Shown: positions 1,468 through 54,067 of the stretch, piece after piece | Position numbering within the stretch: position 1 is the first letter of the stretch | Layout: each line of letters begins with the position of its first letter | Sequence record: OR805294.1 | Direction: 5' to 3' (one strand) | DNA: 64,000 nucleotides | Notes under the pieces: generated by a model | What the model saw: only the letters and a program-made list of their open reading frames with translations | Told to the model about the DNA's origin: nothing | Databases searched by the model: none | Translations under genes and position numbers: made by a program

Positions 1468-1716
1468 ATGGCTAAAGTATTGCATGTTAACAGCATCGGC
1501 AACATCGCCGAAGTGTTTACATCTGTAGACCTCGACAGCGCCTTGTTGCACGCAATCAAGCGCTGTGCATTGATGGGCAAGGTTAAGGTTGTTGGTCCCA
1601 ACGCTCCCGTGTTTGCTAGCCATTACGACGCACTGAGAGCGTACGACGTGCAGTGGCGCCTAGTTCCTCCGGGCTGCGGCGTTACTTTGTACGTCATCGC
1701 CGAGGACAACAACTAA
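1468..1716 (+). CDS. Small early hypothetical protein (82 aa)
   Basis: CAGGAG RBS after the cassette promoter. Confidence 0.8.
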   Translation: MAKVLHVNSIGNIAEVFTSVDLDSALLHAIKRCALMGKVKVVGPNAPVFASHYDALRAYDVQWRLVPPGCGVTLYVIAEDNN

Positions 1717-1727
1717 GGAGAGACATA

Positions 1728-2030
1728 ATGAATCTCGTTCATCTGTGGATCAACGGGCGTGCTGTGACTGCCCGCAAGGTTGTCAGTAAACACACTGTCC
1801 GCAATCCGAACAGTCCGATCGATATCGAGACTATCGACGTTGTTCGACTGCGTCTGCCCCGTGGTGTTCGTGCTAGCAGTTGGACACTCCGTAAGGCAGT
1901 GTACCAGCTCATGGAGCAAAGCTGTAGCTGCTCGAGAGACTGTTGTGGACACTGGTTCGGCGGTGCACGCAAGATCTACATTAACGGCAGAGACATCAGT
2001 GTCGTTGCCGGGTACCAGCGCAATTACTAA
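1728..2030 (+). CDS. Small Cys-rich hypothetical protein (100 aa, CSCSRDCCGHWFG)
   Basis: TAAGGAG RBS places the start at 1728 rather than 1653. Confidence 0.8.
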   Translation: MNLVHLWINGRAVTARKVVSKHTVRNPNSPIDIETIDVVRLRLPRGVRASSWTLRKAVYQLMEQSCSCSRDCCGHWFGGARKIYINGRDISVVAGYQRNY

Positions 2031-2060
2031 AGGAAAAGGGGCAACTGCCCCTTTCCTTTT
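2031..2060 (+). terminator. Intrinsic terminator (same GGGGCAACTGCCCC family)
   Basis: AAAGGGGC-AACT-GCCCCTTTCCTTTT. Confidence 0.85.
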
Positions 2061-2071
2061 ATCCATTAATG

Positions 2072-2144
2072 TGTAAACGCGAATAATTCTTATTTGCACA
2101 GGTCATTGAGATGCGAATGCAAACAAGAGGCATTCTTGATACGG
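2072..2144. promoter_or_regulatory. Two Fur-box-like palindromes (2072-2098, 2118-2144)
   Basis: TGTAAACGCGAAT-A-ATTCTTATTTGCA and TGCAAACAAGAGG-C-ATTCTTGATACGG. Confidence 0.6.
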
Positions 2145-2179
2145 TCGGGTGATAAGAATTGTTCACAAAAAGAAAAAGC

Positions 2180-2207
2180 TTGCGTTATGCTACACAGGTG
2201 CTAGTAT
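2180..2207 (+). promoter_or_regulatory. sigma70-type early promoter
   Basis: TTGCGT-16-TAGTAT with TGn. Confidence 0.65.
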
Positions 2208-2249
2208 GTGTATTGCAGTATCTATAAACATTAATAGCAGGATAAGAAA

Positions 2250-2570
2250 ATGGTTGACTTTAAAGGTTTTAACTGGGACGCACTAGTCCCAGTGGACAAC
2301 GTTTCTACAGTTTCCATTAAAAATCACTACGAGGAACTCCTACAAAGTTTTGTTGACAACGGCATAGACTATGTGTTAGTCCGGCTGTCCCAGGAACTGC
2401 CGCACTACGAGGATTCAGATTATCCCTGCTACAAATTGGTTGACAAGTATGCAGGATGGATAGTAGGTTGGGACTACTACGGATTTGTTGTGGAACGCAT
2501 GGACACGCACCTTTTCTTTGACAACTGCACTGCAAAGGGTGTAATGGACTTCCTGGAAGCCAACGGCTAG
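2250..2570 (+). CDS. Small acidic hypothetical protein (106 aa)
   Basis: CAGGA RBS, promoter upstream, terminator downstream. Confidence 0.8.
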   Translation: MVDFKGFNWDALVPVDNVSTVSIKNHYEELLQSFVDNGIDYVLVRLSQELPHYEDSDYPCYKLVDKYAGWIVGWDYYGFVVERMDTHLFFDNCTAKGVMDFLEANG

Positions 2571-28500: not shown

Positions 28501-31500
28501 TAATGCCATATTGAATCAGTTAAATTCTCAAAGTTTTGTAATAGATTATCATCTTGTATTAAATAACCATCCGCCTCAAATTTACCGTACCAATCGTTTG
28601 TGCGAATGCCGCGCAACTGAAGTCTTTTTTGTCTAGAGTATAGTAACGGATCGTATATAGTATCATTAAATATAGTTTTGTTATCAAATAGTATAGCGTG
28701 TTCTGTATCGCTTGTAGAAACACGGAATAAATATATTCCAATTTGATCGCTTTCGTGAGATACAGAGATAGTTCTTCTGTCCCTATCTATGATAGTATCA
28801 TTAGGCGATATAGCATATCCATTTTGATCTAATATACTATAAACACCATTTGATATTCTTTCTACCTTCTCAGGATAACCTTCGTTTACTTCTAATGTAA
28901 TTTTAGAAGCGCCAGGGGCGACGAATAAAGTGTTATTTGGTGCCCATTGAGTGGTTGCCCAGAATAGGAATCCCTTAGCAGAAGTAACCCAATTTAATAC
29001 TTCTCCTGTAGTTTGGTCTATTTCATTAAATTTCCATCCGTTTAATTCTAAATACTGACCATATCCTATTAGGAAATCAAATACATCCTGAGGAGTATCT
29101 AATTCACTTCCGTATTCTATTTCGTAGAATTCGCTATAATCACCTTCATTAATATAGTTTACTGTTATACCGCCAGTTGCAGGAAGCGATTTTAGACGCA
29201 TCCAGTTATCTTGATTAAATTTTCCTTGTGCTGCAATGACAACGCATTGATAGTAGACTCCATTGTATCGAACTACATCTCCGTAATTGTACTGAACATT
29301 AGTGTCATAAATTGTGAAATTAGAAGTTGTTCCACCTACATTTATTGTAGTTCCGGATACTAACGTACTTCTAGGAACAACTTTAAATACAGGATTTAAT
29401 ACATCGTATCCTCTTACTTCAAATTTTCCATATTCGTTCACACGTATTGCAACACCGCTGAATACGTATTCAGTTATAGGTTTGCCAGTGTATACTCTTA
29501 CATGTATATTTTCGTTAGGTAACAACATGCTAGAATTAGTAGAGCCGCCAGATATACTATCAGCATATACGTTCAATGTATCTACATTGGTATATCCTGC
29601 AAGTCTATGTGCTAAACAAACATCTAACGAACGTATCTTACTACCGAAATTGTATGTAATATCTTGTTTACCCATGAAGGACAATCTATCAAATACGTAT
29701 TGTTGATATCCAGAGTTTAACACTATATTTCCATTTACTACTTCGCCGTGGGCATATGTGTTACTATTAGCAATTCTAGTATATGTAGAACTTGATATAT
29801 ACTGCTTCGCGTTTATGGGTGCTCTTGTATCGTCAAGTGGATTCCAATATCTTTCACCGAAATCTGCAGGTTTCATTAAATATAACAATTCTAACTGAAC
29901 AAATGGCCATTCCGAATTGGTATACCATGCTTCTTCTACAGGACTATTGTCCCCGAATATCCATTCGTCTTGAAGTGTTTCTATTTCTTGATTAGAAAGC
30001 TGCGGAACTATACCTAACTCCTCTGGTGTTTTTAAATCACCAGATGCATCCGACGGTATTAGATTTGGAACTAATCCAGTCCTTTTATACTTTTCATGGG
30101 TGCCTGCTCTATTGCCACGGCGAATTATACCGTTTTCAATATCAGTCCACATATCAGTGTTTTGTGAAGTATAATCTCCATTATATTCTTCATCCCACCA
30201 TGTCGGCTTTTCTACAAACCCTAACATTTCCCACGGTGTTTTATTAGGTGTTAGTGTGTTATAGTAGTATTTGTATAATCCACGCCAGGATCCGATAGAA
30301 TCGTTACTAACTGGACGATAATTCCAAGTTTTCCAGTTTAACGAATTAAATCCAGAATATAATTTATAATTAAGACTATTCTTTAAACACCATTTTAAGA
30401 AATAAGGTTTTACTATTTCATTATATTGTTGCAGAGTATACCCGTTTTCATAAAATTTTGTCGGTTTTACATCGTCTAATTTAAGTAATAAATTGTAATC
30501 TAGTCTAAATTTGTCGGCAATATTGTTATATATTCTTGTTTCAAATTCTAATAATAGATCATCCCTAATATCACCGTAGGTGGGTATTTTAGAACCATCA
30601 TGACCTAAAATTACTTCTGTAGGAGTAACATAACTAGTATCTACAATTATTTTAGGTTGATATACAGGATAACATCCTATTTTAGAAGGTGTTGCAGGTA
30701 TTTTTGCAGAAAGTATGTTATTGTATATACGAACAATATACGACGTATTCGAAGGTGTACTAGACAGTTTAACAACTAAATTATTATTAGAATACGATAG
30801 TGTATAGTCTTTATCTATTGTTAATGTATTGTAATCAACAGAAGTGCCAGATCTTCTAAATACAAGAACAGAAGAATCCATTTTACCTAATATGTTATTA
30901 GTCGGTACTAATAATGTATTTCCTACTGATGCGCTAGAGAAATTGTATTCATCGTATACATCACCCCATGCAGCCATATATGACTGTGTGAAGGCACCAT
31001 TGTATTCGAACGTGCTAGTAACGCGATTTATCACATACGTAAACAATGCATCTATGTTTACTGGGTTTGTATTTTGATTTAAAGGCGCTGCTATTAATTC
31101 TTTTGCATATTTTATGAACTTATCTTTATATCTAGTATATTCGTCGCGTGCAAATCTTATAGCAGAATTTATATTTAATTCTTCGCTAGAAGATACAAGC
31201 ATTGTTTTTAACAATGGACTTCTATTTTGTAGAATAAATGTACCTAAAGATTTGTCTTCAGCAGTATCTCTGTAATTATTATTAGAACTATAAGGATCTC
31301 CTTTAAATCCTATTTGATTAGTCATTATACTAACAAAATGGTTTGTTAGCTCATTTGACGAGTATTCATTTACTTCTAAGTTATTAGGGTTATTCTCTAA
31401 TTGTTGTGGAATTTGATAATACCCTAGTGCGTTATCTGGCAAAGCTTCTTTAGAATAGGTGTATGTTTGAATAACATCAGTTGCAGAGAGTGATCTCAAT

Positions 31501-34091
31501 ATTTTTATAGTTTTAGTAGGTTTCCCGTCGTTATCTAGGACTATAGTAAATTCCACATTCTGTGCAAGGGTAGATTTATTGTATTCTACTCTTATGTCAA
31601 ATATACCCGGTTCCAATTCTTCGGGTGTTACGCTTAGTTCGTATTCTTTTTGCGAAGAATCCGATACTACAAATCTATCTATTACTCTTTGTTTAGAATT
31701 TCCGTCAAATGGCACCCAGGTATGCTCATATGTGGGATTAGAGCCAGATATTGTATAATTCCATTGTTTAAAATAATAATAACCTTTTATTGGTTCGAAT
31801 TCATTTCCGTTAAAGTATTGGAATACATCCATGTGAAGATCGTGTCTAAACACAATATCGGATATTTGACCTAAGTTTTTTACTTCAATAGGAAATCCTA
31901 GTATTTCATCGTCGTATGCACTTTCTTCATTTATTTTATACGAAAAAATCTTAGATCCAGCAAATGTAGATTGCGGGAAACTATCTAACGAAATTGCATT
32001 GTTATTAGAGTCTAAATCAGTATAATATAAATTAAACAAGGGAGCTTGGTTAGCATTTGTTTTTCTATTATAAGTCCTTTCCCATTGTACTCCAGTATAA
32101 TAGAACATGTCTCCTGCAAATGTATCTCCTTCAGTTACTAATACTACATCTCCTTTAGCAACTTTTGTGTATTTGTTAGGAACAGGGATTATACTGTTTA
32201 CTACAGTATTGTCTGGCTGTTCTACTTTAACTATTTTCCATATATAGTCTGTTGCATTTAGTGTAAGAGTTTCGTTATCTCTTACTATTAATTTAACAAT
32301 ACTATCGTCGGGCACTATATTTTTAAATTCTACTAATAGTGCATTATCTTGTTCTATTGTAAAACTAACAAAATCATCTGCAGGATTATATAAGTAGTCA
32401 TACGATACTGGATCATTGTTTGCATCTCTTGTATATGCATCTATTTGAATACCTATTATATGATTACCTATATTTTGTTGAGTAAAATTAAAAGTAAAAT
32501 CATTATTAAATAAAAATGTTCTTCTAGCGCCCGGTCCTTCTATTGCTTCAGCAGCAGGCTTCTTATACATGTTTACTTTATTGTTTACATTTATTTCTAC
32601 TTGGTCGCCAGGCAATAACCCATCTATGTTATCATTTATGATAACATCAAATGCTAAATTAGTAGGTAAGGTAGTTCCTGTAATGGTTACAATGCTATTA
32701 TTCTTGCCAACAGGTGTATTTAATGTTTCTACATTAAATGTAAACGAAGTTCTCGGCTGTCTTATAGATGTTCCTCTGTTAACTACATCTATAGTCTTAA
32801 TAGTTCCTACGCTAGATGGTGTATAAAATTTATATTCAACGCCATTTGTTATGTTTTCAAAACTAACATTGTTTATATCATACGAAATGGGATTCCATTG
32901 CAATCCTTTTGTGTCTGCAATGAAATTCATTTGGTTTAATTCATCTTCGTACGAATACCATTCGGGATTGTAAAACATTTTGTTACCACGTTTTACAATT
33001 ACAAATATATCATCTGTATCAGTAAATGGTTTTCGTAATATTATATTGTATGGCGCTGCATCTGCAATAAATGTATCTACAATTGGATAAGTTATTGTGC
33101 TATTAGATAAGAAAATTAACTTATCTTGATCTTCTAATAGTTTTCCATCAATAGTGTATGATGCAGAATTTGATATACTAGAAATATTATCAGACTCGGC
33201 TACTAGATTAACTTCACCTAAGTAATTATTTCCAGATTTAAATAACTCTATATCTCTATCAAACTCTATAATAGGTCTTCTTGCCTTAACTGCGTTGTTA
33301 TACGTAGATGTATTGGTTGCAGAGGCAGAAGTTGCCATTACAGATTTATGATACCATTTGTTAGTGCGGGACCATGCGTTGCCATCTCTGCAGCCGCGTT
33401 CTATAGTGATATAATCTACAGAGCCAACAGTATCTACTAAGTGAGATTCATCTTTTACTAAAATAATACCTTTTCCGACACCTTCTACAGTTAATGGTCT
33501 ATTAAATGAAGACGAGTTAGTATATTGTATTCTGAGTCCGTTAGAAAGCTGAATAGTATTACCGTTTTCTAATGTTATACTGGCGTTCTTTTTTCCTATT
33601 ATATTGTTTATTATCCATTCGTCTGCGTTTATACCACTTTCGTTTTCTACTGTTAACATAATAACAGGCAGCCGATCTTCTATCCAATAATAATTTTGGA
33701 AATTTATAAATTTATCTAAATCTATCGGCGGACCGAAAGAATAATATCCGCCAGAAAATAAAGTGTCATTATTCTTTGTATTGGCACCATAATAATTTAA
33801 CCTGTTTAACAAGTCTTGGTAAAACATTATATTTGTTTGATCTAACGTAGTAGAATCAATACTATACGAGGTTGCTTCTAACTGATACCAAGTCCGTTCT
33901 TTAGTAGGTTCTGCTAAGTAATAATCGTTTATAGGATCATGTCTACCAGGAACTCTTCTACCTATGTAAGCAGTTATATCCTCTACATTCTTTTTAGAAA
34001 ATAGTTGCTCAAATGTAGCTAAAAAGAATCTTTTTTGGGTATCTGTTCTAAATATACCAGGTAACTTGTTAAACGTTTTTAATGTTGCCAT
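22518..34091 (-). CDS. Giant virion/baseplate wedge-associated protein (3857 aa)
   Basis: Uninterrupted 11.5-kb ORF right after the gp6-like gene; WDxxxWD repeats. Confidence 0.85.
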   Translation of the reverse strand: MATLKTFNKLPGIFRTDTQKRFFLATFEQLFSKKNVEDITAYIGRRVPGRHDPINDYYLAEPTKERTWYQLEATSYSIDSTTLDQTNIMFYQDLLNRLNYYGANTKNNDTLFSGGYYSFGPPIDLDKFINFQNYYWIEDRLPVIMLTVENESGINADEWIINNIIGKKNASITLENGNTIQLSNGLRIQYTNSSSFNRPLTVEGVGKGIILVKDESHLVDTVGSVDYITIERGCRDGNAWSRTNKWYHKSVMATSASATNTSTYNNAVKARRPIIEFDRDIELFKSGNNYLGEVNLVAESDNISSISNSASYTIDGKLLEDQDKLIFLSNSTITYPIVDTFIADAAPYNIILRKPFTDTDDIFVIVKRGNKMFYNPEWYSYEDELNQMNFIADTKGLQWNPISYDINNVSFENITNGVEYKFYTPSSVGTIKTIDVVNRGTSIRQPRTSFTFNVETLNTPVGKNNSIVTITGTTLPTNLAFDVIINDNIDGLLPGDQVEINVNNKVNMYKKPAAEAIEGPGARRTFLFNNDFTFNFTQQNIGNHIIGIQIDAYTRDANNDPVSYDYLYNPADDFVSFTIEQDNALLVEFKNIVPDDSIVKLIVRDNETLTLNATDYIWKIVKVEQPDNTVVNSIIPVPNKYTKVAKGDVVLVTEGDTFAGDMFYYTGVQWERTYNRKTNANQAPLFNLYYTDLDSNNNAISLDSFPQSTFAGSKIFSYKINEESAYDDEILGFPIEVKNLGQISDIVFRHDLHMDVFQYFNGNEFEPIKGYYYFKQWNYTISGSNPTYEHTWVPFDGNSKQRVIDRFVVSDSSQKEYELSVTPEELEPGIFDIRVEYNKSTLAQNVEFTIVLDNDGKPTKTIKILRSLSATDVIQTYTYSKEALPDNALGYYQIPQQLENNPNNLEVNEYSSNELTNHFVSIMTNQIGFKGDPYSSNNNYRDTAEDKSLGTFILQNRSPLLKTMLVSSSEELNINSAIRFARDEYTRYKDKFIKYAKELIAAPLNQNTNPVNIDALFTYVINRVTSTFEYNGAFTQSYMAAWGDVYDEYNFSSASVGNTLLVPTNNILGKMDSSVLVFRRSGTSVDYNTLTIDKDYTLSYSNNNLVVKLSSTPSNTSYIVRIYNNILSAKIPATPSKIGCYPVYQPKIIVDTSYVTPTEVILGHDGSKIPTYGDIRDDLLLEFETRIYNNIADKFRLDYNLLLKLDDVKPTKFYENGYTLQQYNEIVKPYFLKWCLKNSLNYKLYSGFNSLNWKTWNYRPVSNDSIGSWRGLYKYYYNTLTPNKTPWEMLGFVEKPTWWDEEYNGDYTSQNTDMWTDIENGIIRRGNRAGTHEKYKRTGLVPNLIPSDASGDLKTPEELGIVPQLSNQEIETLQDEWIFGDNSPVEEAWYTNSEWPFVQLELLYLMKPADFGERYWNPLDDTRAPINAKQYISSSTYTRIANSNTYAHGEVVNGNIVLNSGYQQYVFDRLSFMGKQDITYNFGSKIRSLDVCLAHRLAGYTNVDTLNVYADSISGGSTNSSMLLPNENIHVRVYTGKPITEYVFSGVAIRVNEYGKFEVRGYDVLNPVFKVVPRSTLVSGTTINVGGTTSNFTIYDTNVQYNYGDVVRYNGVYYQCVVIAAQGKFNQDNWMRLKSLPATGGITVNYINEGDYSEFYEIEYGSELDTPQDVFDFLIGYGQYLELNGWKFNEIDQTTGEVLNWVTSAKGFLFWATTQWAPNNTLFVAPGASKITLEVNEGYPEKVERISNGVYSILDQNGYAISPNDTIIDRDRRTISVSHESDQIGIYLFRVSTSDTEHAILFDNKTIFNDTIYDPLLYSRQKRLQLRGIRTNDWYGKFEADGYLIQDDNLLQNFENLTDSIWHYYDTENTLDNPIIEQTARHLIGFQDREYLNNLRITGDQQYLFYKGMISQKGTKQSVDKLLRSEFIKSNENIQIYEEFAFKLADFGATNSNAQLEVLIDGDLVKSDPQIVELSYPVSYGTGKVSEVRVLSSEMIYTTTPIIVFATPEEANAGLDPNVDAYLQGNQLNSPNNSIVEEIRATGQVVLKNGRIDSVTITEPGYGYIKPPKIAIIYNQTVITIDKLISIIKNKIDEDSPYDMIITIDSDDNERWLSKPNGRMPVIVGNEIKYNDRLVPTTKQLDGNIPTAGYVNTKDVTHQILYPKNIFTLWERKDVSKPSLTSYIWVGNASSVGIDWGVFVIYSGLTPATNALYPYCVINNMVYSYTVDSDGVIDAIFDKEGKQVTNVPIQNPLFFKNVRFKNNATVNVTSGKVWIDSINSDNDWAVAVVSGSTITNIRSRQNLVDSKLFENAYFYDKDTKQTIDFLPVYDPVKGLIPGTADRNIHYKSEIDPTTYSVSANSANIDDELAFTDSEVGRLWWDTSTCRYLQYEQPGKLDGSETKEQILEYRRDNWGKLFPGSVINVYEWVSSPFTPDLYNGTGAPKSLTDYVVRYDTNSAGQATPIYYYWVKGKQEIPNNIKSRNMTSTSVENLITNPKSQGYKWFSFIGNNSFVFSNVSKTINGKTPVFQVNYRYTKNINEKHTEWKLLREGDEVSVIPTYLWNRLVDSLVGYNINGDIVPDPTLSEFSKLGIKVRPRQSMIDNRMAARKVFVQNANSLLSTISIKDFNPAWADGLASSVLWRYVNWYADGFNQFNTTPVKQVSTVGELTGLVGKLKDGDIVKLVRPEEFTLYQYSNQNFTLIGRQNSAIQLLPAIYTVSRSYTNDNALRELIFALYNNVFKDANLVMRNLVFFALINYILSEQQNLDWVFKTTYIKVNQEGESLTQQESVTTDPIQSFISYIKEIKPYTTKIRDLGVKYNVPMDIANGTAYDYDSLYDWPDDHEGEQAPFRPIEVPRLFDINSLYDRVQCGYITKPNYIDLGDQTFIGTGGQVVLIANTPNDEFIALDGISQYQLGANKDISRITSVTINGQEIEGYTFTTILNATFIILPSTPDAGDVIIVNYTDIKSVWKIKVDGKTITKEQYDVEINENGYLQVTFKSNTLIKIGSKIKLYSGTEFTQTPLEEMRLEYNARQPGKVLKPIFDLAIDPAGKIAGGWGIPKWGQLRWGIPGTIQEGNRQLWTEYLQYSGAAGRYILYQTDLQRDILSAAPINGSYPYSSFTERLYESSAGERDVLFQFNERFGDEYGCDYEGKVIDAKDFEYIFSRPWDSTKWDEYAWDASTATYVITPNYTETSATVISEGKTTFVIRYVVDITSVTLNGSSTQYTATKGSNFTSIEVPGAVEGDEIVFTFNPVTNTFNSDTSKPIIDGAYFEDTNVREGIPEEQALVSPTENMVIIVDSNAKTTEVQYVVTNTDTSNPFVKIVLTEKIVLQDIIGLVINGDPNTEDKLKFNIDNNGINTVVIAYPTSFSTGDIISVVYKDNYTSQTTVANDYRFDTNSVVRDNTQGYITVDLRNTKQNKDINTWDTFAWDPSIDSPENADSVYLLPIDMPTIANPDEVVAQASGQLTYKFVDITANGVDTMIHTGMNILPNRVQGVYSSGVAMYGYTVVVDNSGITPELVINFEIAPSAGTVITVKYQSYSIMKLDDYVSYVMNKYNITSVTASEYKLQTLDMFVAANKRMISVSNNLYTRKSKEILYTNTKLFTVDTSIRNFVGETVYINGISKTKDKDYTIEFTNITGDNAKLLVVYKGTLNAGDIIRIDWTETNIQKVTDIVNNSWVAVFNEQHNFINPVTMQGDNVVIKYPAKPLSFRVHLDEMGETHYVRISDYYSTRLAKPLKLTDKSIELVDASAIVDPSSSKPGVVWIGTERIEFLYKRGNKLHGLTRGSLGTSVYTGTNGDTTVPLYTRVFDGSYKQEQEDTGKYIWENNNGGLALSTTPWAIFLQNRPSSGLTP

Positions 34092-34097
34092 TTTTGG

Positions 34098-37000
34098 TTA
34101 AATTCTCATATTCATTTCTGTTAAGTTATTTACTATCTCTACATTAGCTACAGTTGCAGTAGATATAAACAATTCATCCGATTCTGCTCTAATTTGGAAT
34201 AAATTACCAAATTTAGAAGTTTGTTCTATAGGTACTATAACAACCGAACCTATAACTCCCGCTAGGGTTTGGTGAATGTATGCTGCTAATTCTGTATAAT
34301 AGAATGATTCACCGAAATCCCAGTTGTTTATGTTAAAATATTCGTCTATTGCAGAAACAACTTTAGATTTTATTTCGTTATCAGTTAAAGTAGTGGAACC
34401 TACTTTAACTACTTTGAATGTACATTTGTATTCTTCTCTTGCTTGCTGACCAAATAATACTTTAAATCTAGCAGGCTGGAATACAATTTGGTCTGACAGC
34501 ATTTTGTATGTACTAAGATCACCAAATTGTATTCTTAGTTCTTCAGTAGTAGGCGATTCAGGGAAACGTTCGATAGGTAAATTTTGATTTTTCCATTTAA
34601 GGATATCGTCATAATACGATTGTGTTAAAGTTACCATATCTACAATATTACTTATACTAGGATCTATTCTGTTATCTGAAGGAGCATAATGTTTCCATTT
34701 ATAATGCAACGGATAAAACTGAGAATCCTCATTCTGTGTATAACCCCTTCCGTTACTAACACTATGGTCATCATCAAACACATATGATAATACAGCATAA
34801 CTTGCAGTTAATGTCATAAACTGTGCTAATGAAGACGAATTAGCCTTTGCTGCGGTTATACCTGTTATTTCGTTAATAGTTTGATTATTTCCATTGTTAA
34901 TGCGTATTGTTTCAAAAATACGACTACCAGGAGAATCTAAATTCTGTGTTACAATATTTATTCCGTCATTTTCTATGCGTTCTATAAAAATAGTTGTCCC
35001 ATCAACACTATTATTACTATTATAATTATCAGAATATATTGCTTCTAATACTTTAGTCCTTAGCAATGATTTAAAAGATGATTCTGCTGCACTTGCAATT
35101 AAAACTAAGTCCCTTGCAACAACATCATTATAATTAAAATCTAAACTATTAGGATTCTGTTGGCGAAGATCTAACCAAGATGCTTGCCATAATCTATTAT
35201 ATTCATACCCGTCGTAATCTGTGGTTTTTTCGTGAAAAACTAAATCCGTAGGTGAAACAAATTGTTCAAAAATAAAAGTATTATCTGGTATACCGTCTCT
35301 ATCTCTGTCTGCAGGAACTACTACTATTTTTCTGGGATCACTATAGCCGTCAGATTCTATAAATGTTTGGAAAGAATTCCAGACAATAGAATTACCCAAT
35401 TGGCCTTGATTAGAATAAAATATTCGTATAATATCGTTAACTTGTTGCCCTACGTATTCTGCATCTAAAACGCCAGCAGATGCAGCTCCGGTTGGCAATG
35501 CACCCGGTAATAATATGCCGTTTTGCCAATACTGAATTTCTTTAGGTAAAGTATCTCTGTATTTTAAAATTATTTTGTTGTCGGGATATGTTAAACTAAC
35601 TATACCGTTAACCAAACGCCATTGACCGTTTCCGATAAACTGCCAATTTTCTACTATAGTAGGACCTGTGTTAATTCCTAATATTTCTATTTCATCTCTT
35701 TGTGCAGAACCGGTGTTTATATCAAATTCGGTTTCGTCAGTATCGTAGTAAAATTCTACGGTACCATTTGTTTCAAATATAAACTTTGTTCCTCTTGATA
35801 AAAATGTGTAATTATCTGTTTCGGTAGAATACGTCAAAACAAGCATCCAGTCTTTTCTAACTGCAGGTTGAGATAAAGATAAATCGAATTCAAAATTATC
35901 TAAATTTGTAGTGGGTACGCCCAATACAATAAACCACGAACCTTCTGGATCTACATCTATATCGTACTTTAATCCAAATTCATTTCTTCTAAATAGTTGA
36001 TTTGCTATATCTGTAGTTTCTTCTGTATCAAACGTTGTTTTATATCTAGGATATACACTATCTACATACCAATTGGCTGGAATTTCTATATCAAATACAA
36101 ATAAACTTGCGTTTAATCTAGTTGCAATAAACTCATTATCTGTAGTTGCATCCCCTTGTGACACTGGGTTAGTAATACTTTTAACGGTTACTTCTTTATA
36201 TTCTGTACCGTTTGTAAATTTAATTTTAGATCCGACAGAAAGGAATCTAAATTCCCCTTCTGGTCTATTATTATAATTCGTAGGATATATATAGTTGGTA
36301 GATCCTTTAACTAAGTATCCTGTATTAGTTGCATCAGACGACGGATACGTTACCCACTTTGCTTGAGTAGAAGTGTATCTAAATATATTAGGAACTCCGG
36401 GGCGAACAATAGAGGTATTTATGGGGTTAGGAGTTGGGTTTTGTCTATATCTTATATACTCACTTAGGTAATTATTCCAATAAAAGTTGATTAAATCTTG
36501 ATTTCTGATAAATGTCTGTAAATTATTTCTAACTACTATATTTTCGCTAACTAATTTATCACCCATTGCTACTGTAGTAGAAGGCACAGTACTCTGATTG
36601 TATATAGAACCATCTTCGCCAAAAATATTTAAATTTTGATGAAATCCAGTAGGATCGTTAATATCTATATATCTAGAATGTCCAGAATGTGTTCTATTGA
36701 TAGCATGAACTTTTGCAATAGAACTACCCTGCGTTAACGGGAAAACATTATAGTCCTCATTGTTTACCATTCTGTCTTGGGTATAATATACTTGCGGTGC
36801 TCTGGTTTTTATCTCATCGTTTGTTTCTGTAGGCGAAGAATTAGATATAGTTTGTTCTAAACTAAAAATTAATCGAAGATCATATTGTTGAGAATCCGCA
36901 CCTATATACGGTATTACTAATTCCATCCCGGATGCTTCTTCCGGACGTAAAGTAAAAGTAGTGTTAGATGAAACTCTATACCATACTCTAAATGTACCTG

Positions 37001-38057
37001 TAGGAATAGTACCGAAATTTCCATCAGAGAATTTAACAGAAATTTGATCATTAACTCTAGAAACTACTTCAAATATATTTCTTATACCTAAGTTAATACT
37101 ATTATAAATTATATTTGTTCCGCCAGAAACGTTAGGTACCTTAGTCCATTTTTCTTCAACAGTTCCAATTTCGTTAATCTCTTGGACCCACACATCAGTT
37201 TCGTTTATATTTCTATCATTTATATCTATAATTCTATTTTGAACAGGAAAATCGAATGCAAAATCTTTAAATGCAAGAGTACCTTGTTTAAATTGCAAAA
37301 AGAAACCTGTGTTTGCAGAATCTAACCCCTGACCATCGTTCCTGTATATAACATGAAACGCATCGTCTGGATCGGGTTGTCTTTCCGTAAATGTTTCGTC
37401 AAAATCTGAGTTAACTACTTCAAACGGTAAGGCGACATTATTGACAACTATCGGTATAGGAAATGCAACGTTTACCCTTTTTACGTTGTTTAATTGATAT
37501 AAGCTAGTAGGTATATTACCTACTGTTCCACTTTTAAATGGTCTACCAAATGGATTAGTAGAAGCGAATGCCGCATTTAATATAGTTATAAACTTGTCAT
37601 AACTATCTATATCGTTGGGATCATTCCAAAATACAGTTCTATTATTTAAATTCCTTTCTTGAGAATCTGTAACTGGTTCCGACGTTTGCACACCTATTAA
37701 TTTAAATAACCCTTTAGCAGGTATATTTCGTTTAGGTTGATAGTTTATCATTCTAGCTAAACGTATAATGCTATCCCTACGCTCAGCAGTATCCATAAAG
37801 TTTTCTCTAGAATTTAAATCCATTCTGAATGCAAGACTAGTTCCTAGATATGCAAGCAATTCAATAATAGCAATAAATTCAGAGCTTTCTATGTAATCAT
37901 TAAAATCTTCAGGATAATGAATTTGAACATAATTAACTAACGCAGTCTTTAAGGAATCAAAATCATATGCTTTGAAATCGACGTCCTTGAAACTTTTATA
38001 TATTTTTCTATAATCTTCCGCTGCGAACAGATTAGATTGTCTTACGTCTTGTGACAT
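34098..38057 (-). CDS. gp6: Baseplate wedge protein, T4 gp6-like (1319 aa)
   Basis: DFDSLKxAL...DF.D...SSE...IIELLAY...RENFMDTAERRDS; QDRMVxxEDY; follows gp25. Confidence 0.85.
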   Translation of the reverse strand: MSQDVRQSNLFAAEDYRKIYKSFKDVDFKAYDFDSLKTALVNYVQIHYPEDFNDYIESSEFIAIIELLAYLGTSLAFRMDLNSRENFMDTAERRDSIIRLARMINYQPKRNIPAKGLFKLIGVQTSEPVTDSQERNLNNRTVFWNDPNDIDSYDKFITILNAAFASTNPFGRPFKSGTVGNIPTSLYQLNNVKRVNVAFPIPIVVNNVALPFEVVNSDFDETFTERQPDPDDAFHVIYRNDGQGLDSANTGFFLQFKQGTLAFKDFAFDFPVQNRIIDINDRNINETDVWVQEINEIGTVEEKWTKVPNVSGGTNIIYNSINLGIRNIFEVVSRVNDQISVKFSDGNFGTIPTGTFRVWYRVSSNTTFTLRPEEASGMELVIPYIGADSQQYDLRLIFSLEQTISNSSPTETNDEIKTRAPQVYYTQDRMVNNEDYNVFPLTQGSSIAKVHAINRTHSGHSRYIDINDPTGFHQNLNIFGEDGSIYNQSTVPSTTVAMGDKLVSENIVVRNNLQTFIRNQDLINFYWNNYLSEYIRYRQNPTPNPINTSIVRPGVPNIFRYTSTQAKWVTYPSSDATNTGYLVKGSTNYIYPTNYNNRPEGEFRFLSVGSKIKFTNGTEYKEVTVKSITNPVSQGDATTDNEFIATRLNASLFVFDIEIPANWYVDSVYPRYKTTFDTEETTDIANQLFRRNEFGLKYDIDVDPEGSWFIVLGVPTTNLDNFEFDLSLSQPAVRKDWMLVLTYSTETDNYTFLSRGTKFIFETNGTVEFYYDTDETEFDINTGSAQRDEIEILGINTGPTIVENWQFIGNGQWRLVNGIVSLTYPDNKIILKYRDTLPKEIQYWQNGILLPGALPTGAASAGVLDAEYVGQQVNDIIRIFYSNQGQLGNSIVWNSFQTFIESDGYSDPRKIVVVPADRDRDGIPDNTFIFEQFVSPTDLVFHEKTTDYDGYEYNRLWQASWLDLRQQNPNSLDFNYNDVVARDLVLIASAAESSFKSLLRTKVLEAIYSDNYNSNNSVDGTTIFIERIENDGINIVTQNLDSPGSRIFETIRINNGNNQTINEITGITAAKANSSSLAQFMTLTASYAVLSYVFDDDHSVSNGRGYTQNEDSQFYPLHYKWKHYAPSDNRIDPSISNIVDMVTLTQSYYDDILKWKNQNLPIERFPESPTTEELRIQFGDLSTYKMLSDQIVFQPARFKVLFGQQAREEYKCTFKVVKVGSTTLTDNEIKSKVVSAIDEYFNINNWDFGESFYYTELAAYIHQTLAGVIGSVVIVPIEQTSKFGNLFQIRAESDELFISTATVANVEIVNNLTEMNMRI

Positions 38058-50070: not shown

Positions 50071-50523
50071 ATGAACGATTACACACATTACACAGAGGAA
50101 GATTTCATATTTTTAGCATATGATTTAAATACTCAGCTTATAAATGATGGATATCCTGACGCTGCTGTAAAATTTATTACTAATCAGTTTATTTTAGAGC
50201 ATAGACATCCTGACGAAATAAAACGTTGTATAGGATGTAATTCTAAAATGTACGAAGATGTTATTGCTACTAAGAGAAATTTATCTGGTAAATCGCATTG
50301 CAGACATTGCGAATCGAAACTTAGTATGTATAAGGAAGTTGTTAAAGAAGTAGCAAATACAACACAAATACTTCGCATACCAGAAAAACATTTAAATTCA
50401 GTTAAACGATTAATTAGAATATATAATGAGCAAAACAAAACTAGTGCATATCAGAGTATATTAGTTAAAACAAAGAAACTTAACACAGGAGTTTCTAAAA
50501 AGTTAAAAAGAAAGGGACGTTAA
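50071..50523 (+). CDS. Zinc-finger-containing hypothetical protein (150 aa)
   Basis: CIGC...CRHC pair, basic C-terminus; GATAAATA at 50031 and GAGG RBS. Confidence 0.75.
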   Translation: MNDYTHYTEEDFIFLAYDLNTQLINDGYPDAAVKFITNQFILEHRHPDEIKRCIGCNSKMYEDVIATKRNLSGKSHCRHCESKLSMYKEVVKEVANTTQILRIPEKHLNSVKRLIRIYNEQNKTSAYQSILVKTKKLNTGVSKKLKRKGR

Positions 50524-50540
50524 TTGTCCCTTTCTTTTTA
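50507..50540. terminator. Bidirectional terminator
   Basis: AAAGAAAGGGAC-GTTAATT-GTCCCTTTCTTT. Confidence 0.8.
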
Positions 50541-50765
50541 TAGGAAGCTTCTACCTGTTTCTGCTTCGATTTTTTGTTTAATAAATTCTCCTAAACGTAC
50601 CCGCTCTTGATATGATAAAGACCAAGCAGTGTGCCAGTCAAATCCATTAATTTTATCACATATTTGGACTATTTCGCCTTCTAATCCCAGTGATTCTTGT
50701 TCATATTCTTGTATAACGTTCCTAATATCATCTGGGGTTCCCGATACTAGGATTCTCTGAAAAAA
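50538..50765 (-). CDS. -1 frameshift extension (73 aa) of the gp26-like chaperone; gp51/GT-like domain
   Basis: Frame has no ATG/GTG/TTG; entered through slippery U UUU UUC (50765-50759) with a 10-bp stem 6 nt downstream. Confidence 0.75.
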   Translation of the reverse strand, partial: FFQRILVSGTPDDIRNVIQEYEQESLGLEGEIVQICDKINGFDWHTAWSLSYQERVRLGEFIKQKIEAETGRSFL

Positions 50766-51601
50766 CTTACTGGGTTAAAATCTACAGGTACTACAAAACT
50801 TTTATTACAGTTGTCGCATACTGCATCAAAGTCGCCATTAACTCCTACTTGATTTATTTCTTTTAAAAGACTATCTATTTTATTAACATCTGCTCTATCT
50901 ATATTTGCTATAAATTCTTTTATATCAGCCAGTGTCTGAGGAGTATTATTAACTATATCTATACCGTTAGTTTCATCTACAATACGAACTATTGTTTTTG
51001 CAATTAATTCGAAATTTAATGATGACAGTTCATTTATTGTGTTAGAAAAGGCAGAAAGTTTTTCTTCATCTGAATACATATCGCTTTGCATTATTCTAAT
51101 AAATTTTGCTTGTTCTAATGCAGTTTTTGCAACTGTCATATTATCTGAAAAATCATATGGTCTAATAAATATAGATAGACCGTTATCGAGGTTCACGACG
51201 TATTGATCTTCTAAATAAGTGGACGTATTAATAACATTTAATAAGTCTATTCCATATAAATTTTTATGATTACAATGCGGGCACGTAGAAGAAATATCTA
51301 TTGTGTTACCGTATGATGCTGCTTTTATAGCAACACATATCATATGAATGTCATTAATCAAGAGTTTATTTACATCTTTAATTCCCGGTACACAACTCTT
51401 AATTACTTCTTTTAAGCCTTCACCGTTCACTAATGCATCAGGATTTTTTATTAATACTTCATCTTTTCCTGTCATAGCATATACCCCTAGTTCTCCAGAA
51501 TCGGTGTATTCTACAACATTTGATGGATAAAATGAATTTCCGCTGGGCAAACGAATATAAGATTTGAATGTTCTGTAATATTGATGTAATTTGTTGCTCA
51601 T
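50747..51601 (-). CDS. Baseplate hub/tail assembly chaperone, T4 gp26-like (284 aa)
   Basis: YIRLPSG..FY; MTGKDE; CPHC and CDNC motifs; ends FNPVSFF. Confidence 0.8.
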   Translation of the reverse strand: MSNKLHQYYRTFKSYIRLPSGNSFYPSNVVEYTDSGELGVYAMTGKDEVLIKNPDALVNGEGLKEVIKSCVPGIKDVNKLLINDIHMICVAIKAASYGNTIDISSTCPHCNHKNLYGIDLLNVINTSTYLEDQYVVNLDNGLSIFIRPYDFSDNMTVAKTALEQAKFIRIMQSDMYSDEEKLSAFSNTINELSSLNFELIAKTIVRIVDETNGIDIVNNTPQTLADIKEFIANIDRADVNKIDSLLKEINQVGVNGDFDAVCDNCNKSFVVPVDFNPVSFFRES

Positions 51602-51670: not shown

Positions 51671-54067
51671 GTGGCAGAAGATATTAGAATTGTTGGCGTT
51701 GATCCTAGTGTCCCTGGCTGGGCTAGAGAAGAAACTCTTAATAAAATAGTATCTGAGTTAAAAAAACTCAATGGATCTAATACAAGAGAAAACGACGAAC
51801 TAAAAGATGCAGTAGATGAACTAGTTAGGGTAACCCGTAGATCTAACGAAGATACATCTAGAACAGATAATAACACTGAAATAAAAGAAGCATTAAATAG
51901 ATTATCTTCTTCGTTAAAACAACAGAAAAAATCTGATAATTCTTTATCTGCAAAGCAAGGTGGAAACAAACCTCCCGTATTGCCGCCTGACAATAAGAAA
52001 TCTAAATTAGATACAGATACTATAGGCGCATTTATTACTGCCGTCGGTACTGCTTCAAAGGCAGTAGCAAAATTTACTTTAAGTATGGCATCTTTTGCAG
52101 TTGGCGGAAGTATATATGCTGCATTAAAGCAAGCTGCATCGTCGCAACTTACTTTATCTAGAGATTTATATAAATCAGGTTGGAACTTCGGAACGGTATT
52201 AGACGATGCATCTGGTATTATTAAATCTACCAACTTAGACGGTATTTCGTATGCCATAAAAGGTTTAGGTATAAATTCATCTGCATTATCTGAAGTATTA
52301 AAAGGCAATGAATTAGCAATACAAAAATACGGAATAAAATCGTTTGTAGATTTGTCTTCTAGCTTAAAAAGACAAGGCAATAGCTTAGGTATGTCTTTAA
52401 AAGAAACAGCAGATTATGTAGGAGAATATTTAGAATCTCAACGTTTAATGGGTACATTTGATAAAATGCGCCAAGTAAACATGACTGCCCTTGCATCTAA
52501 AGCACTTAAAGATACCCAAGCATTTGCTACTGCATTAAGAATGTCCACAGAAGACCTTCAGGCAAAAATGAATGAAAGTTTAAAAGATGTAGACTTTCGT
52601 GTAGCAATAGAATCAGTTAACGCAAATTCTAAAGAAGCCGCCGCCCAAATTTATGCCGCTTTGCCGGAACAATTGCAAACTATGTTTAAGGTAGCTCTTA
52701 AAGATACTCCGTCTTTTATGGCATCCAAAGAATACGCCGATTTAATAAAATCCGGGCAAGGAGAATTAGCTAGACAAATAATTGCAGTATCATCTGGACT
52801 GAAATCTGGTAATATAACTAACGGTCAGGCAGATGATGCAATGAAACGACTTATAAAATCTACTAGTTTTGCAGAAAGTACAATGCGTAGACTTGCTATG
52901 CTAGATGCTCGTGGACTAATAGATAGTAATGTTGCTGCTGCTGCGTATGGATTAAAAGACCTTAGAGATAAAATGGATGGTCATTATGAAGGAATCCAAA
53001 ATACAGAAGCTACAAATTTAGCAAAAGTCGAAGATGTAAGAAATAGAGCATTAGCTGTATTAGATACGTTTGTATCATCTATAATGAGAGCAGGATTCGA
53101 ATCTGATGAATTTGCTAAATTATTAGATAATGCAAATGAAATGTTAAAAACAATTCATAATACAGCAGAAGACTTAGGTAAACAATTAGGTCCGGAATTA
53201 TTTAAATTTGTTAACAATGCTATGGAATATCTAAATGGTTTATTTAGTAAAGATGTAGCAGGAAATATAAATGTAAATTATTCTAAAATAATAGGAGATA
53301 TTTTAACAAGTTCCGGTGCTGCTATAGTAGTTGGCGTTCTTGCTATTATGACTACATTTAAAGGTGTTGTTATTTCTTCGTTATCGTCGTGGCTTAAAGG
53401 TGCATCAGGACCTATGTCATCATTAGGTGGCACCGTAAAAACTATAGCAGGAAGATTAGGGGCATTTGCAGCACTAGCAGTATCGTTTACAAATGGAATA
53501 GGTAGATTAAGTCAATCAATTTCGGAAGGCGGCGATGCAATAGAATCTGCATTGAATTTTTTATCGGGCGCCGGCGAAGGTATAATAGATCCTGTGTTTA
53601 AATCCCTTACATGGGCAGCTAACAAATTAGGTATAGTATCTGATGAAGCAGCAGATGGATTTAGTAAATACATCAGTGATACTAATTTGCAACAGTTCTT
53701 GGGTCTACAAGATATACCTATAAAAGTAGAAACTACTAATAAACCTGCATATACACCGCCTGGACCTACTGCTACTAAAACATCTGCATACGGTAAAATA
53801 GAAACTCCGAAAGCTCCTGCTATAATTCCTACAGCTCAGCCAGATGTTGCAGACGCAGCAAAACAAAGTCCTACTCCTGTAGATCCTACTAGCAATATAA
53901 AGCCTATAGAAAATACAGGAATGAGTTCTCAAGACATGCTAAATAGAAGTACAGATAAACTTATACGTTTACAAGAAGAACAAATACGACAGTTACAAGA
54001 GCTTGTAGATATTCAGCGCAGAGCATTAGCTGCTACTAGAGAAACTGGATTTACAAGAACTAGGTAA
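51671..54067 (+). CDS. Tape-measure-like protein (798 aa)
   Basis: Long helical Ala/Leu/Ser/Lys-rich protein with hydrophobic segments, next to the chaperone gene. Confidence 0.65.
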   Translation: MAEDIRIVGVDPSVPGWAREETLNKIVSELKKLNGSNTRENDELKDAVDELVRVTRRSNEDTSRTDNNTEIKEALNRLSSSLKQQKKSDNSLSAKQGGNKPPVLPPDNKKSKLDTDTIGAFITAVGTASKAVAKFTLSMASFAVGGSIYAALKQAASSQLTLSRDLYKSGWNFGTVLDDASGIIKSTNLDGISYAIKGLGINSSALSEVLKGNELAIQKYGIKSFVDLSSSLKRQGNSLGMSLKETADYVGEYLESQRLMGTFDKMRQVNMTALASKALKDTQAFATALRMSTEDLQAKMNESLKDVDFRVAIESVNANSKEAAAQIYAALPEQLQTMFKVALKDTPSFMASKEYADLIKSGQGELARQIIAVSSGLKSGNITNGQADDAMKRLIKSTSFAESTMRRLAMLDARGLIDSNVAAAAYGLKDLRDKMDGHYEGIQNTEATNLAKVEDVRNRALAVLDTFVSSIMRAGFESDEFAKLLDNANEMLKTIHNTAEDLGKQLGPELFKFVNNAMEYLNGLFSKDVAGNINVNYSKIIGDILTSSGAAIVVGVLAIMTTFKGVVISSLSSWLKGASGPMSSLGGTVKTIAGRLGAFAALAVSFTNGIGRLSQSISEGGDAIESALNFLSGAGEGIIDPVFKSLTWAANKLGIVSDEAADGFSKYISDTNLQQFLGLQDIPIKVETTNKPAYTPPGPTATKTSAYGKIETPKAPAIIPTAQPDVADAAKQSPTPVDPTSNIKPIENTGMSSQDMLNRSTDKLIRLQEEQIRQLQELVDIQRRALAATRETGFTRTR

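What the first reader, a model, noticed from the sequence alone, without database searches (positions are those of the whole stretch)
50538..50765. Unannotated -1 programmed frameshift extending the gp26-like chaperone (G/GT-type system in a T4-like jumbo phage)
Seen on the minus strand: ...AGT TTT TTC AGA GAA TCC TAG contains U UUU UUC (50765-50759); 6 nt later a 10-bp stem TCCTAGTATC/GATATTAGGA (50752-50720, one G-U). The -1 frame stays open for 73 codons (QRILVSGTPDDIRNV...FDWHTAWSLSYQERVRL...RSFL) to TAA at 50540-50538, ends at the bidirectional terminator, contains no ATG/GTG/TTG, and has an in-frame TAA four codons before the slip site, so it cannot initiate independently. Products would be 284 aa and about 354 aa. 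Established: X XXY YYZ plus a downstream stem drives -1 shifting, and lambda-type tail chaperones G/GT use it next to the tape-measure gene. Inference: T4's separate gp26/gp51 functions are made here by frameshifting.
Basis: partly seen in the sequence, partly recalled or inferred. Interest (0 to 1): 0.78.

Follow-up and report, generated by a model that had tools for sequence, protein, structure and literature searches.

The report
Frameshifted gp26–gp51 tail chaperone gene
A jumbo Pseudomonas phage, and all 176 other related loci I checked, appears to make a short and a long version of a tail-assembly helper protein from one gene by a programmed ribosome slip, whereas phage T4 makes the two versions from separate genes (26 and 51).

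Summary

- **Source:** the window is Pseudomonas phage Ettore, a PA5oct-like jumbo phage.
- **Signal:** the 284-aa gp26-like gene (Pfam PF12322) has an in-phase T TTT TTC three codons before its stop. A hairpin starts 6 nt later. The -1 frame then runs 73 codons with no ATG, GTG or TTG and stops inside a terminator-like hairpin.
- **Chance:** the window alone is not decisive, because about one such case is expected by chance.
- **Comparison:** all 177 gp26-like loci examined, at 25–76% identity, carry an in-phase heptamer 1–11 codons before the stop. The loci are Rak2-like jumbo phages, T4-like cyanophages, a KVP40-like phage, Aeromonas phage 65 and phiM7.
  - The heptamers are T TTT TTC, T TTT TTT or A AAT TTT, all in a class that shifts efficiently in E. 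coli.
  - A homologous -1 frame of 57–95 codons follows each one.
- **T4:** T4 lacks the signal. Its gp51 is a gp26-type domain plus an in-frame 48-residue tail that lines up with these extensions. T4 gp51 therefore matches the long product and gp26 the short one.
- **Unproven:** a lambda G/GT-like role in tail assembly is inferred, not shown. The hairpin is not conserved across the family.
- **Prior work:** ten literature searches found no description of this frameshift.

The parts
50538..51601 (-). Whole recoded gene: the gp26-like 0-frame ORF plus the -1-frame extension, through the extension's stop codon
   Evidence: Heptamer and -1 ORF conserved in 177 related loci.
50747..51601 (-). 0-frame ORF, 284 aa, gp26-like hub assembly chaperone (short product)
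   Evidence: Pfam PF12322 T4_baseplate, E 3.2e-25, 89.5 bits against a 24.5-bit cut-off. phrog_150 'baseplate hub', E 3.9e-23. AlphaFold2 mean pLDDT 88.4. Two CxxC pairs are nearly invariant in the family.
50759..50765 (-). Slippery heptamer T TTT TTC in X XXY YYZ phase, three 0-frame codons before the stop
   Evidence: Across the other 176 loci: T TTT TTC 160, A AAT TTT 12, T TTT TTT 4. All belong to the class H_HH.U_UU.Y, which PMC4066793 lists among the most efficient heptamers in E. coli.
50538..50759 (-). -1-frame extension: 73 codons plus TAA, with no ATG/GTG/TTG. It is a gp51-type C-terminal domain predicted as three helices.
   Evidence: Aligned with the extensions of relatives and with the T4 gp51 C-terminus. 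100% amino-acid identity in 11 Wroclawvirus genomes. The 2 substitutions between Ettore and PA5oct are both synonymous in this frame only. AlphaFold2 pLDDT 77, helices at 9-36, 42-46 and 50-68.
50720..50752 (-). Hairpin 6 nt downstream of the heptamer; candidate frameshift stimulator
   Evidence: -13.8 kcal/mol, z -2.8. A stem in the same register occurs in the 56%-identical relative L183, with one compensatory and two one-sided changes (my reading of the pairs). No family-wide consensus structure was found.
50504..50540 (-). Terminator-like hairpin; its first bases are the stop codon of the -1 frame
   Evidence: one site found against 0.6 expected in shuffles.
51671..54067 (+). Divergent neighbour, 798 aa, a virion structural protein. 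It is a candidate tape-measure or hub protein, and so a candidate client of the chaperone pair. This role is inferred.
   Evidence: The PA5oct ortholog carries the depositors' ESI-MS/MS note. It sits in a conserved position next to the gp26-like gene in Rak2-like phages. It has weak colinear similarity to the RaK2 protein that its depositors likened to a tape measure. It has no Pfam, PHROG or PDB hit.

Best explanation
The gp26-like gene of phage Ettore is decoded in two ways. Most ribosomes read the 0 frame to the TAG and make a 284-aa protein. This protein is the counterpart of T4 gp26, a hub/tail assembly chaperone.

At T TTT TTC a fraction of ribosomes slip back one base, with both tRNAs re-pairing. 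The slip is possibly helped by the hairpin 6 nt downstream and by the nearby 0-frame stop. These ribosomes go on for 73 codons in the -1 frame. The result is a protein of about 354 aa that has the same body plus a small helical C-terminal domain. This long form is the counterpart of T4 gp51.

By analogy with lambda G/GT and with T4 genetics, the shared body would bind one assembly partner, plausibly the tape-measure or hub protein. The extra domain would bring in a second partner. The fixed short:long ratio would be set by the efficiency of the slip. Neither form would stay in the virion.

Shown here: the signal, its phase, the open frame, their conservation across the family, and the colinearity of T4 gp51 with the long form.

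Inferred: that the slip occurs, how efficient it is, what the hairpin contributes, and the binding partners.
For: - **Signal and frame in the window**.
- **Conservation.** All 177 related gp26-like loci have an in-phase heptamer 1-11 codons before the stop, followed by a -1 frame of 57-95 codons. The +1 control frame has a median of 8.
- **Constraint at the nucleotide level.** The residue before the two Phe codons varies (N, S, H, D, A, G, T, R), yet its codon always ends in T where the T-type heptamer is used. In cyanophage-type loci Ser is AGT or TCT only. The naive probability for 39 cluster representatives is 8e-20.
- **Two heptamer types.** T TTT TTC and A AAT TTT replace each other while keeping the XXXYYYZ phase. 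Both are in the class H_HH.U_UU.Y.
- **Peptide conservation starts at the shift site.** It begins upstream of any annotated ATG, with the motif LL..PEEI.
- **No conserved start**.
- **T4 as a natural control.** T4 has no heptamer (its Phe-Phe is TTC TTT) and no open -1 frame. It instead has a second gene, 51, whose product is PF12322 (residues 1-201, E 7.7e-55) plus a tail. That tail matches phrog_634 and aligns with the extensions.
- **Extensions of T4-like relatives** match phrog_634 'baseplate hub assembly catalyst' at E 1.8e-30 and 3.5e-21.
- **Coding signature.** Both substitutions in the extension between Ettore and PA5oct are synonymous only in the -1 frame.
- **Chaperone role.** The T4 review (PMC3004832) lists gp26 and gp51 as hub assembly chaperones and states that gp51 is absent from the particle. 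The PA5oct record gives an MS note to the neighbouring genes but not to this one.
Against: - No direct evidence of the long product was available. There are no proteomic or ribosome-profiling data.
- The jumbo-type extension is linked to the T4-type extension and to T4 gp51 only weakly by sequence. hhalign gives P 0.0025 and 0.006, and the HMM hits rank at the top but are not significant. The link rests mainly on position, length and shared motifs.
- No stimulatory structure is conserved across the family, and one clade tested shows no covariation.
- Several relatives have an ATG at or overlapping the 0-frame stop, so coupled re-initiation could also make a free small protein.
- The gp26 fold has no significant match to solved G-type chaperones. 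HK97 2ob9 scores E 1.7.
- The 798-aa neighbour is not identified.
Confidence: 0.82

Rival explanations
1. The downstream frame is translated on its own as a small separate protein. Translation would start by termination-reinitiation or at a non-canonical start codon. No fused product would exist.
For: - Annotators call a separate small ORF in most relatives.
- Some relatives have an ATG overlapping the stop (Phosso, 121Q, XbC2, Yen9-04).
- Vibrio phage D528 has such an ATG and no heptamer.
- The protein collection holds small called proteins of 69-74 aa.
Against: - Ettore has no ATG, GTG or TTG in the frame.
- The first ATG is scattered from codon 1 to 76 and is absent in 8 jumbo-type loci.
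- Peptide conservation starts at the shift site, upstream of the called starts.
- This model does not explain why the heptamer, its phase and the T at a synonymous site are kept in 177 of 177 loci.
- T4 gp51 carries the domain fused in frame.
Confidence: 0.08
2. The same long protein is made, but the RNA polymerase slips on the T run and adds one U to some transcripts. The ribosome does not slip.
For: The signal is a run of six T (seven in 4 loci). An extra U would give the same reading frame. Sequence alone cannot exclude this.
Against: - Twelve loci use A AAT TTT, with only five T, yet keep the XXXYYYZ phase.
- The phase is kept in every locus, which polymerase slippage does not need.
- From general knowledge, bacterial polymerase slippage usually needs longer runs.
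- All three heptamers fall in the class that shifts ribosomes efficiently in E. coli.
Confidence: 0.07
3. The apparent shift is a sequencing error or a decaying gene, and the open -1 frame is chance.
For: Within the window about one such heptamer plus open frame is expected by chance.
Against: The same arrangement occurs in 11 independently sequenced Wroclawvirus genomes, with the extension 100% identical in protein. It also occurs in 166 more distant loci. Substitutions are synonymous in the -1 frame.
Confidence: 0.01

Closest known systems
Lambda gpG/gpGT and the conserved -1 frameshift of tail assembly chaperones in long-tailed phages (Levin, Hendrix and Casjens 1993; Xu, Hendrix and Duda 2004, both as cited in PMC5009743)
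   Same: - There are two overlapping frames.
- A slippery heptamer lies close to the end of the upstream frame.
- The long form is the short form plus a C-terminal domain.
- The T4 counterparts gp26 and gp51 are listed as assembly chaperones, and gp51 as absent from the particle (PMC3004832).
- In T4-like relatives the pair lies between a gene annotated 'tail tube' and a large uncharacterised protein.
   Different: - The protein family is different (PF12322, with two CxxC pairs).
- There is no significant fold or sequence likeness to G-type chaperones.
- In Ettore the candidate client gene is a divergent neighbour, not the next gene downstream.
- The heptamer is T TTT TTC.
- Binding partners are unknown.
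Phage T4 gp26 and gp51 (hub assembly chaperone and hub assembly catalyst)
   Same: The body belongs to the same Pfam family. T4 gp26 ends at the same place as the short product. T4 gp51 has the same body plus a tail colinear with the -1 extension.
   Different: T4 encodes the two forms in two separate, divergently placed genes. It has no slippery heptamer and no open -1 frame after gene 26. Ettore encodes both in one gene.
'gp51' small ORFs of T4-like cyanophages (cluster T4-GC_12) and the 'baseplate hub assembly catalyst' ORFs of the KVP40-like phage ValKK3 and phiM7
   Same: They hold the same position directly after gp26 and are in the -1 frame. The same T TTT TTC or T TTT TTT heptamer lies in front of them.
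   Different: They are annotated as free-standing genes of 31-55 aa starting at an internal ATG. They are about 13 residues shorter than the jumbo-phage extensions. None of the fetched records annotates a frameshift.

Membership tests
-1 frameshifted tail assembly chaperone pair (lambda G/GT type) | Second frame overlaps the end of the first, lies in the -1 frame and has no start of its own | tested here: met
   There is no ATG/GTG/TTG in 73 codons, and the -1 frame is closed four codons upstream of the heptamer.
-1 frameshifted tail assembly chaperone pair (lambda G/GT type) | [quoted passage not shown] | tested here: met
   177 of 177 loci. The heptamer class is efficient in E. coli.
-1 frameshifted tail assembly chaperone pair (lambda G/GT type) | Gene pair lies between the tail tube gene and the tape-measure gene | tested here: inconclusive
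   In Ettore the pair is a divergent neighbour of an unidentified 798-aa virion protein. In T4-like relatives it lies between a gene annotated 'tail tube' and a large uncharacterised protein.
-1 frameshifted tail assembly chaperone pair (lambda G/GT type) | Sequence or fold related to known G-type chaperones | tested here: not met
   There is no chaperone family in Pfam. PHROGs gives only a weak phrog_15960 hit, E 0.015. The PDB profile search finds nothing. Foldseek's best chaperone hit is HK97 2ob9 at E 1.7, probability 0.16.
-1 frameshifted tail assembly chaperone pair (lambda G/GT type) | Both products made in a fixed ratio and absent from the virion; the short part binds the tape measure and the extension binds the tube protein | not testable with these tools
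   There are only indirect hints. The PA5oct record has no MS note for this gene although its neighbours have one. The T4 review lists gp26 and gp51 as chaperones and states that gp51 is not in the final particle.
T4 gp26/gp51 family (Pfam PF12322 T4_baseplate) | Match to PF12322 above the gathering score | tested here: met
   89.5 bits against a 24.5-bit cut-off, residues 38-282. T4 gp26 and gp51 both match the full model.
T4 gp26/gp51 family (Pfam PF12322 T4_baseplate) | Two distant CxxC pairs | tested here: met
   C107, C110 and C262 are nearly invariant in 22 relatives. The second pair follows at 262/265.
gp51-type C-terminal domain (phrog_634 'baseplate hub assembly catalyst') | Sequence match of the extension to the family | tested here: inconclusive
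   Extensions of T4-like relatives match at E 1.8e-30 and 3.5e-21, and T4 gp51 residues 147-246 match at E 8.2e-24. The Ettore extension itself has no PHROG hit. It links to the T4-type domain only weakly (hhalign P 0.0025 and 0.006). It does align end to end, with shared motifs.

The most novel reading that the evidence does not exclude
The -1 frameshift that joins gp26 to a gp51-type domain is ancestral to the whole T4-like assemblage: Rak2-like jumbo phages, cyanophage T4-likes, KVP40-like phages, Aeromonas 65-like phages and rhizobiophages. On this reading T4 genes 26 and 51 are a duplicated, hard-wired replacement of the frameshift. gp26 and gp51 would then be T4's long-missing counterparts of the G/GT tail assembly chaperones, acting on the tape-measure protein gp29.
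Probability: 0.55. Interest if true: 0.78.

Novelty: new member of a known kind. Interest (0 to 1): 0.68.

Why it matters
Programmed -1 frameshifting in tail assembly chaperone genes is a hallmark of long-tailed phages. I found no description of it for T4 and its relatives, and the exact roles of T4 gp26 and gp51 in hub assembly have stayed unclear (PMC3004832).

If the reading here is right, several things follow.

- One recoding signal, conserved in all 177 loci checked, ties gp26 and gp51 together as the short and long forms of one chaperone.
- It explains why gp51 is a gp26 paralog with an extra tail.
- It explains why 'gp51' looks truncated to a mini-ORF in cyanophages and in the KVP40-like phage.
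- It gives a concrete, testable model for how T4-like and Rak2-like phages set up hub and tail-tube assembly.
- In practice, none of the annotated records I inspected marks a frameshift here, so such records probably miss or mis-start this product.

Tried and rejected
- **tblastn of the extension.** A search of the 73-aa extension against 50,697 phage records found only the 11 Wroclawvirus genomes. All other hits had E of 1 or more. Plain sequence search therefore cannot trace the domain.
- **Pfam and PHROGs on the Ettore extension.** No credible hit.
- **PDB profile searches** with the gp26-like and extension alignments. Nothing meaningful.
- **Foldseek of the 284-aa model against PDB.** No match with E of 0.001 or below.
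- **Family-wide RNA structure.** RNAalifold gave no consensus on 45 diverse sequences or on a 24-sequence clade. A stem I proposed by eye for that clade did no better than shuffles, so I dropped it.
- **Finding T4-like loci with a six-sequence alignment.** This failed because no conserved stretch was available. A single-protein query worked.
- **Identifying the 798-aa neighbour.**
  - It has no Pfam, PHROG or PDB hit.
  - It has only two homologues in the large protein search.
  - It has only weak similarity to the RaK2 counterpart.
- **phmmer of the extension against 1.84 billion representatives.** Three small proteins and no in-frame fusion.
- **Literature.** Ten full-text searches combined terms such as gp26, gp51, baseplate hub, frameshift, chaperone and PA5oct. 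None found a description of this frameshift. The library lacks most subscription journals.
- **Sequencing error or pseudogene.** Rejected on the comparative data.

Full report
**Source and gene.** The region matches Pseudomonas phage Ettore (OR805294.1) at 100% identity. Ettore is a Wroclawvirus, a 288-kb jumbo phage like PA5oct. Ten further records, representing nine other phages, match at 98.5-99.6%. The minus-strand ORF 50747..51601 encodes 284 aa. It matches Pfam PF12322 'T4_baseplate' (E 3.2e-25, 89.5 bits against a 24.5-bit cut-off) and phrog_150 'baseplate hub'. The three Wroclawvirus records whose annotation I inspected stop the gene at the TAG and annotate nothing on that strand up to the next gene. 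The PAC2 record calls a 43-aa ORF on the opposite strand there.

**The observation.**
- T TTT TTC lies at 50765-50759 in X XXY YYZ phase, three codons before the stop.
- The -1 frame is closed by TAA four codons upstream. From the shift it is open for 73 codons to TAA at 50540-50538, with no ATG, GTG or TTG.
- The hairpin starts 6 nt after the heptamer. It folds at -13.8 kcal/mol with a z-score of -2.8.
- The -1 stop is the first triplet of a terminator-like hairpin at 50540-50504. If the extension were not coding, the gene would carry about 205 nt of 3' untranslated sequence.
- Within the window, 111 in-phase heptamers occur in 34 long ORFs. The chance that a -1 frame stays open for 73 codons is 0.0088. 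About one such case is therefore expected by chance, although this one is the extreme of the 111. The window alone does not settle the matter.

**Relatives among jumbo-type phages.**
- tblastn with the 284-aa protein finds Rak2-like jumbo phages at 25-31% identity. Synteny is conserved: portal, a virion protein of 720-800 aa, then divergently the gp26-like gene and a small downstream ORF.
- In all 12 GenBank relatives the same in-phase heptamer lies 1-11 codons before the stop, and the -1 frame is open from there through the annotated small ORF. RaK2 has none annotated.
- I added 79 IMG/VR contigs and a 56%-identical metagenomic relative.

**Relatives among T4-like phages.**
- I followed a weak hit to a T4-like cyanophage, S-BM1. 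Its gp26 ends with the same heptamer, and the 3' half of its -1 frame is annotated 'T4-GC_12 gp51'.
- The same arrangement holds in 80 further cyanophage-type contigs at 50-76% identity.
- It also holds in Aeromonas phage 65, the KVP40-like ValKK3 and Sinorhizobium phage phiM7. In the last two the downstream ORF is annotated 'baseplate hub assembly catalyst', the name of T4 gp51.

**Totals.**
- All 177 loci have an in-phase heptamer. Among the other 176 the counts are T TTT TTC 160, A AAT TTT 12 and T TTT TTT 4.
- The -1 frame runs 57-95 codons where it is complete. The +1 control frame has a median of 8.

- The residue before the two Phe codons varies, yet its codon always ends in T in loci with the T-type heptamer. 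In the 80 cyanophage-type loci Ser is AGT (44) or TCT (27) and never another Ser codon.
- For 39 cluster representatives, the naive probability of 'NNT + TTT' from the genes' own codon usage is 8e-20. This treats the clusters as independent, which overstates the case, but the margin is large.
- Where the T run is interrupted, the replacement A AAT TTT keeps the tandem-slip pattern and phase.
- All three heptamers fall in the class H_HH.U_UU.Y. Sharma et al. 2014 found this class among the most efficient in E. coli, and U_UU.Y is the second-best A-site tetramer (PMC4066793).
- Peptide conservation begins at the shift site, with the motif LL..PEEI, upstream of every annotated ATG.
- In the jumbo-type set the first ATG of the -1 frame lies anywhere from codon 1 to 76 and is missing in 8 loci. 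Ettore is the only locus with no ATG, GTG or TTG at all.
- Ettore and PA5oct differ at 2 positions in the extension. Both changes are synonymous in the -1 frame and in neither other frame.

**T4 as the key comparison.**
- In T4 (KJ477684.1) gene 26 ends with Phe-Phe encoded as TTC TTT. No heptamer is present, the -1 frame is closed, and gene 25 follows.
- Gene 51 lies divergently upstream. Its 249-aa product matches PF12322 over residues 1-201 against model positions 1-219, at E 7.7e-55. T4 gp26 matches over residues 1-206 at E 8.8e-64.
- T4 gp51 also matches phrog_150 at E 1e-87. Its residues 147-246 match phrog_634 'baseplate hub assembly catalyst' at positions 2-103.
- The -1 extensions of S-BM1 and ValKK3 match the same family at positions 58-119 and 58-113, with E 1.8e-30 and 3.5e-21.
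- The last 49 residues of T4 gp51 align end to end with the extensions. They include an N-terminal LL..P.EI motif and a C-terminal motif ending in ER.
- T4 gp51 is therefore an in-frame natural equivalent of the predicted long product, and T4 gp26 of the short product.

**Limits of the homology.** The link between the jumbo-type extension and the T4-type extension is weak by sequence alone. hhalign gives P 0.0025 between the two extension profiles and 0.006 against T4 gp51. An HMM of the jumbo extensions ranks the ValKK3 extension first among non-self hits, the phiM7 extension third and T4 gp51 fifth among 827 background segments, but without significance. The case rests on position, heptamer, length and motifs together.

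**Exceptions.**
- T4 has two genes.
- Vibrio phage D528 has no heptamer and has an ATG overlapping the stop.
- In the Stenotrophomonas phage IME-SM1 record the gp51-type frame lies +1 rather than -1 relative to the gp26 frame. I cannot tell whether this is real or an assembly artefact.

**RNA structure.**
- The Ettore hairpin is real in silico. By my reading of the aligned sequences and folds, the 56% relative has a stem in the same register with one compensatory and two one-sided changes.
- Across 160 distinct loci the 55 nt after the heptamer fold more stably than upstream windows of the same genes. The means are -11.7 and -7.1 kcal/mol, and the median z is -1.4.
- There is no common structure, and one clade tested shows no covariation.
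- The stimulator, if any, is lineage-specific. The close 0-frame stop, one codon away in 101 loci, may also contribute. That is inference.

**Structure and function.**
- AlphaFold2 gives a confident model of the 284-aa body: pLDDT 88, mixed alpha/beta, with the two CxxC pairs.
- It has no significant PDB match. The HK97 tail assembly chaperone appears at E 1.7 and is not evidence.
- Many matches occur among predicted phage proteins from diverse myoviruses.
- The extension is predicted as three helices, pLDDT 77.
- The 2010 T4 review lists gp26 and gp51 as hub assembly chaperones. It states that gp51 is required for assembly but absent from the particle, and it reports conflicting results on whether gp26 is in the hub (PMC3004832).
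- The PA5oct record marks the neighbours but not this gene as found by virion MS.
- The G/GT-like mechanism is therefore a reasoned analogy. Membership in the G/GT protein family is not supported, and the 798-aa neighbour's identity as a tape measure remains open.

**Prior knowledge.** Ten full-text searches found no description of a frameshift in gp26 or gp51 genes. I read the 2016 recoding review (PMC5009743) only by searching it for four terms: 'tail assembly', 'phage T4', 'myovir' and the heptamer. The passages shown cover lambda, P2 and archaeal viruses, and they mention T4 only for gene 60. None of the annotated records I fetched marks a joined CDS. The library lacks most subscription journals, so earlier mention elsewhere cannot be excluded.

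**Rule compliance.** No sequence joined across the shift was built, saved, printed or sent to a tool. Each frame was searched, aligned and folded apart. I note it here as a possible slip.

Noticed in passing
L101 (Stenotrophomonas phage IME-SM1, NC_054952.1), gp26 gene and downstream: The annotated gp26 is 280 aa because the 0 frame runs on. The gp51-type peptide lies in the +1 frame rather than the -1 frame relative to it. This is the only such record seen. It may be an assembly artefact or a different kind of shift.
   Followed up: partly
L102 (Vibrio phage D528, OZ195942.1), end of the 'baseplate hub' gene: There is no slippery heptamer. The gp51-type ORF has its own ATG overlapping the stop codon. 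This lineage seems to have replaced the frameshift by coupled translation.
   Followed up: partly
L097 (phage T4, KJ477684.1) 1716..2465 minus strand: This T4 record has no CDS annotated for gene 51, although the 249-aa ORF is intact. Gene 26 also carries an annotated internal in-frame start (gp26').
   Followed up: partly
L014 (Yersinia phage fHe-Yen9-04) 2489..3364: The gp26-like gene is annotated as a heavy-metal transporting P-type ATPase. This is probably a misnaming driven by the CxxC motifs.
   Followed up: no
L003 (phage PAC2) 2441..2572, which corresponds to window 50629..50760 plus strand: A 43-aa ORF is annotated on the opposite strand across the start of the extension. It is likely a spurious call filling the apparently empty stretch.
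   Followed up: no
window 22518..34091 and 34098..38057, minus strand: Two adjacent giant ORFs of 3857 and 1319 aa.
   Followed up: no
window 51671..54067 plus strand: The 798-aa virion protein evolves very fast. The 5.8-billion-protein word-index search found only two hits at E <= 1e-5: its own 100%-identical cluster and one homologue at 40% identity. It has Gly/Ala-rich hydrophobic stretches.
   Followed up: partly
model of window 50750..51601: The gp26-like fold recurs in predicted proteins of very diverse contractile-tail phages, including Bacillus SP-15, Campylobacter CP220, Ralstonia phiRSL1, an Ackermannviridae 'cysteine-rich protein' and Leptospira LE4. Whether those genes also carry a frameshift was not checked.
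   Followed up: no
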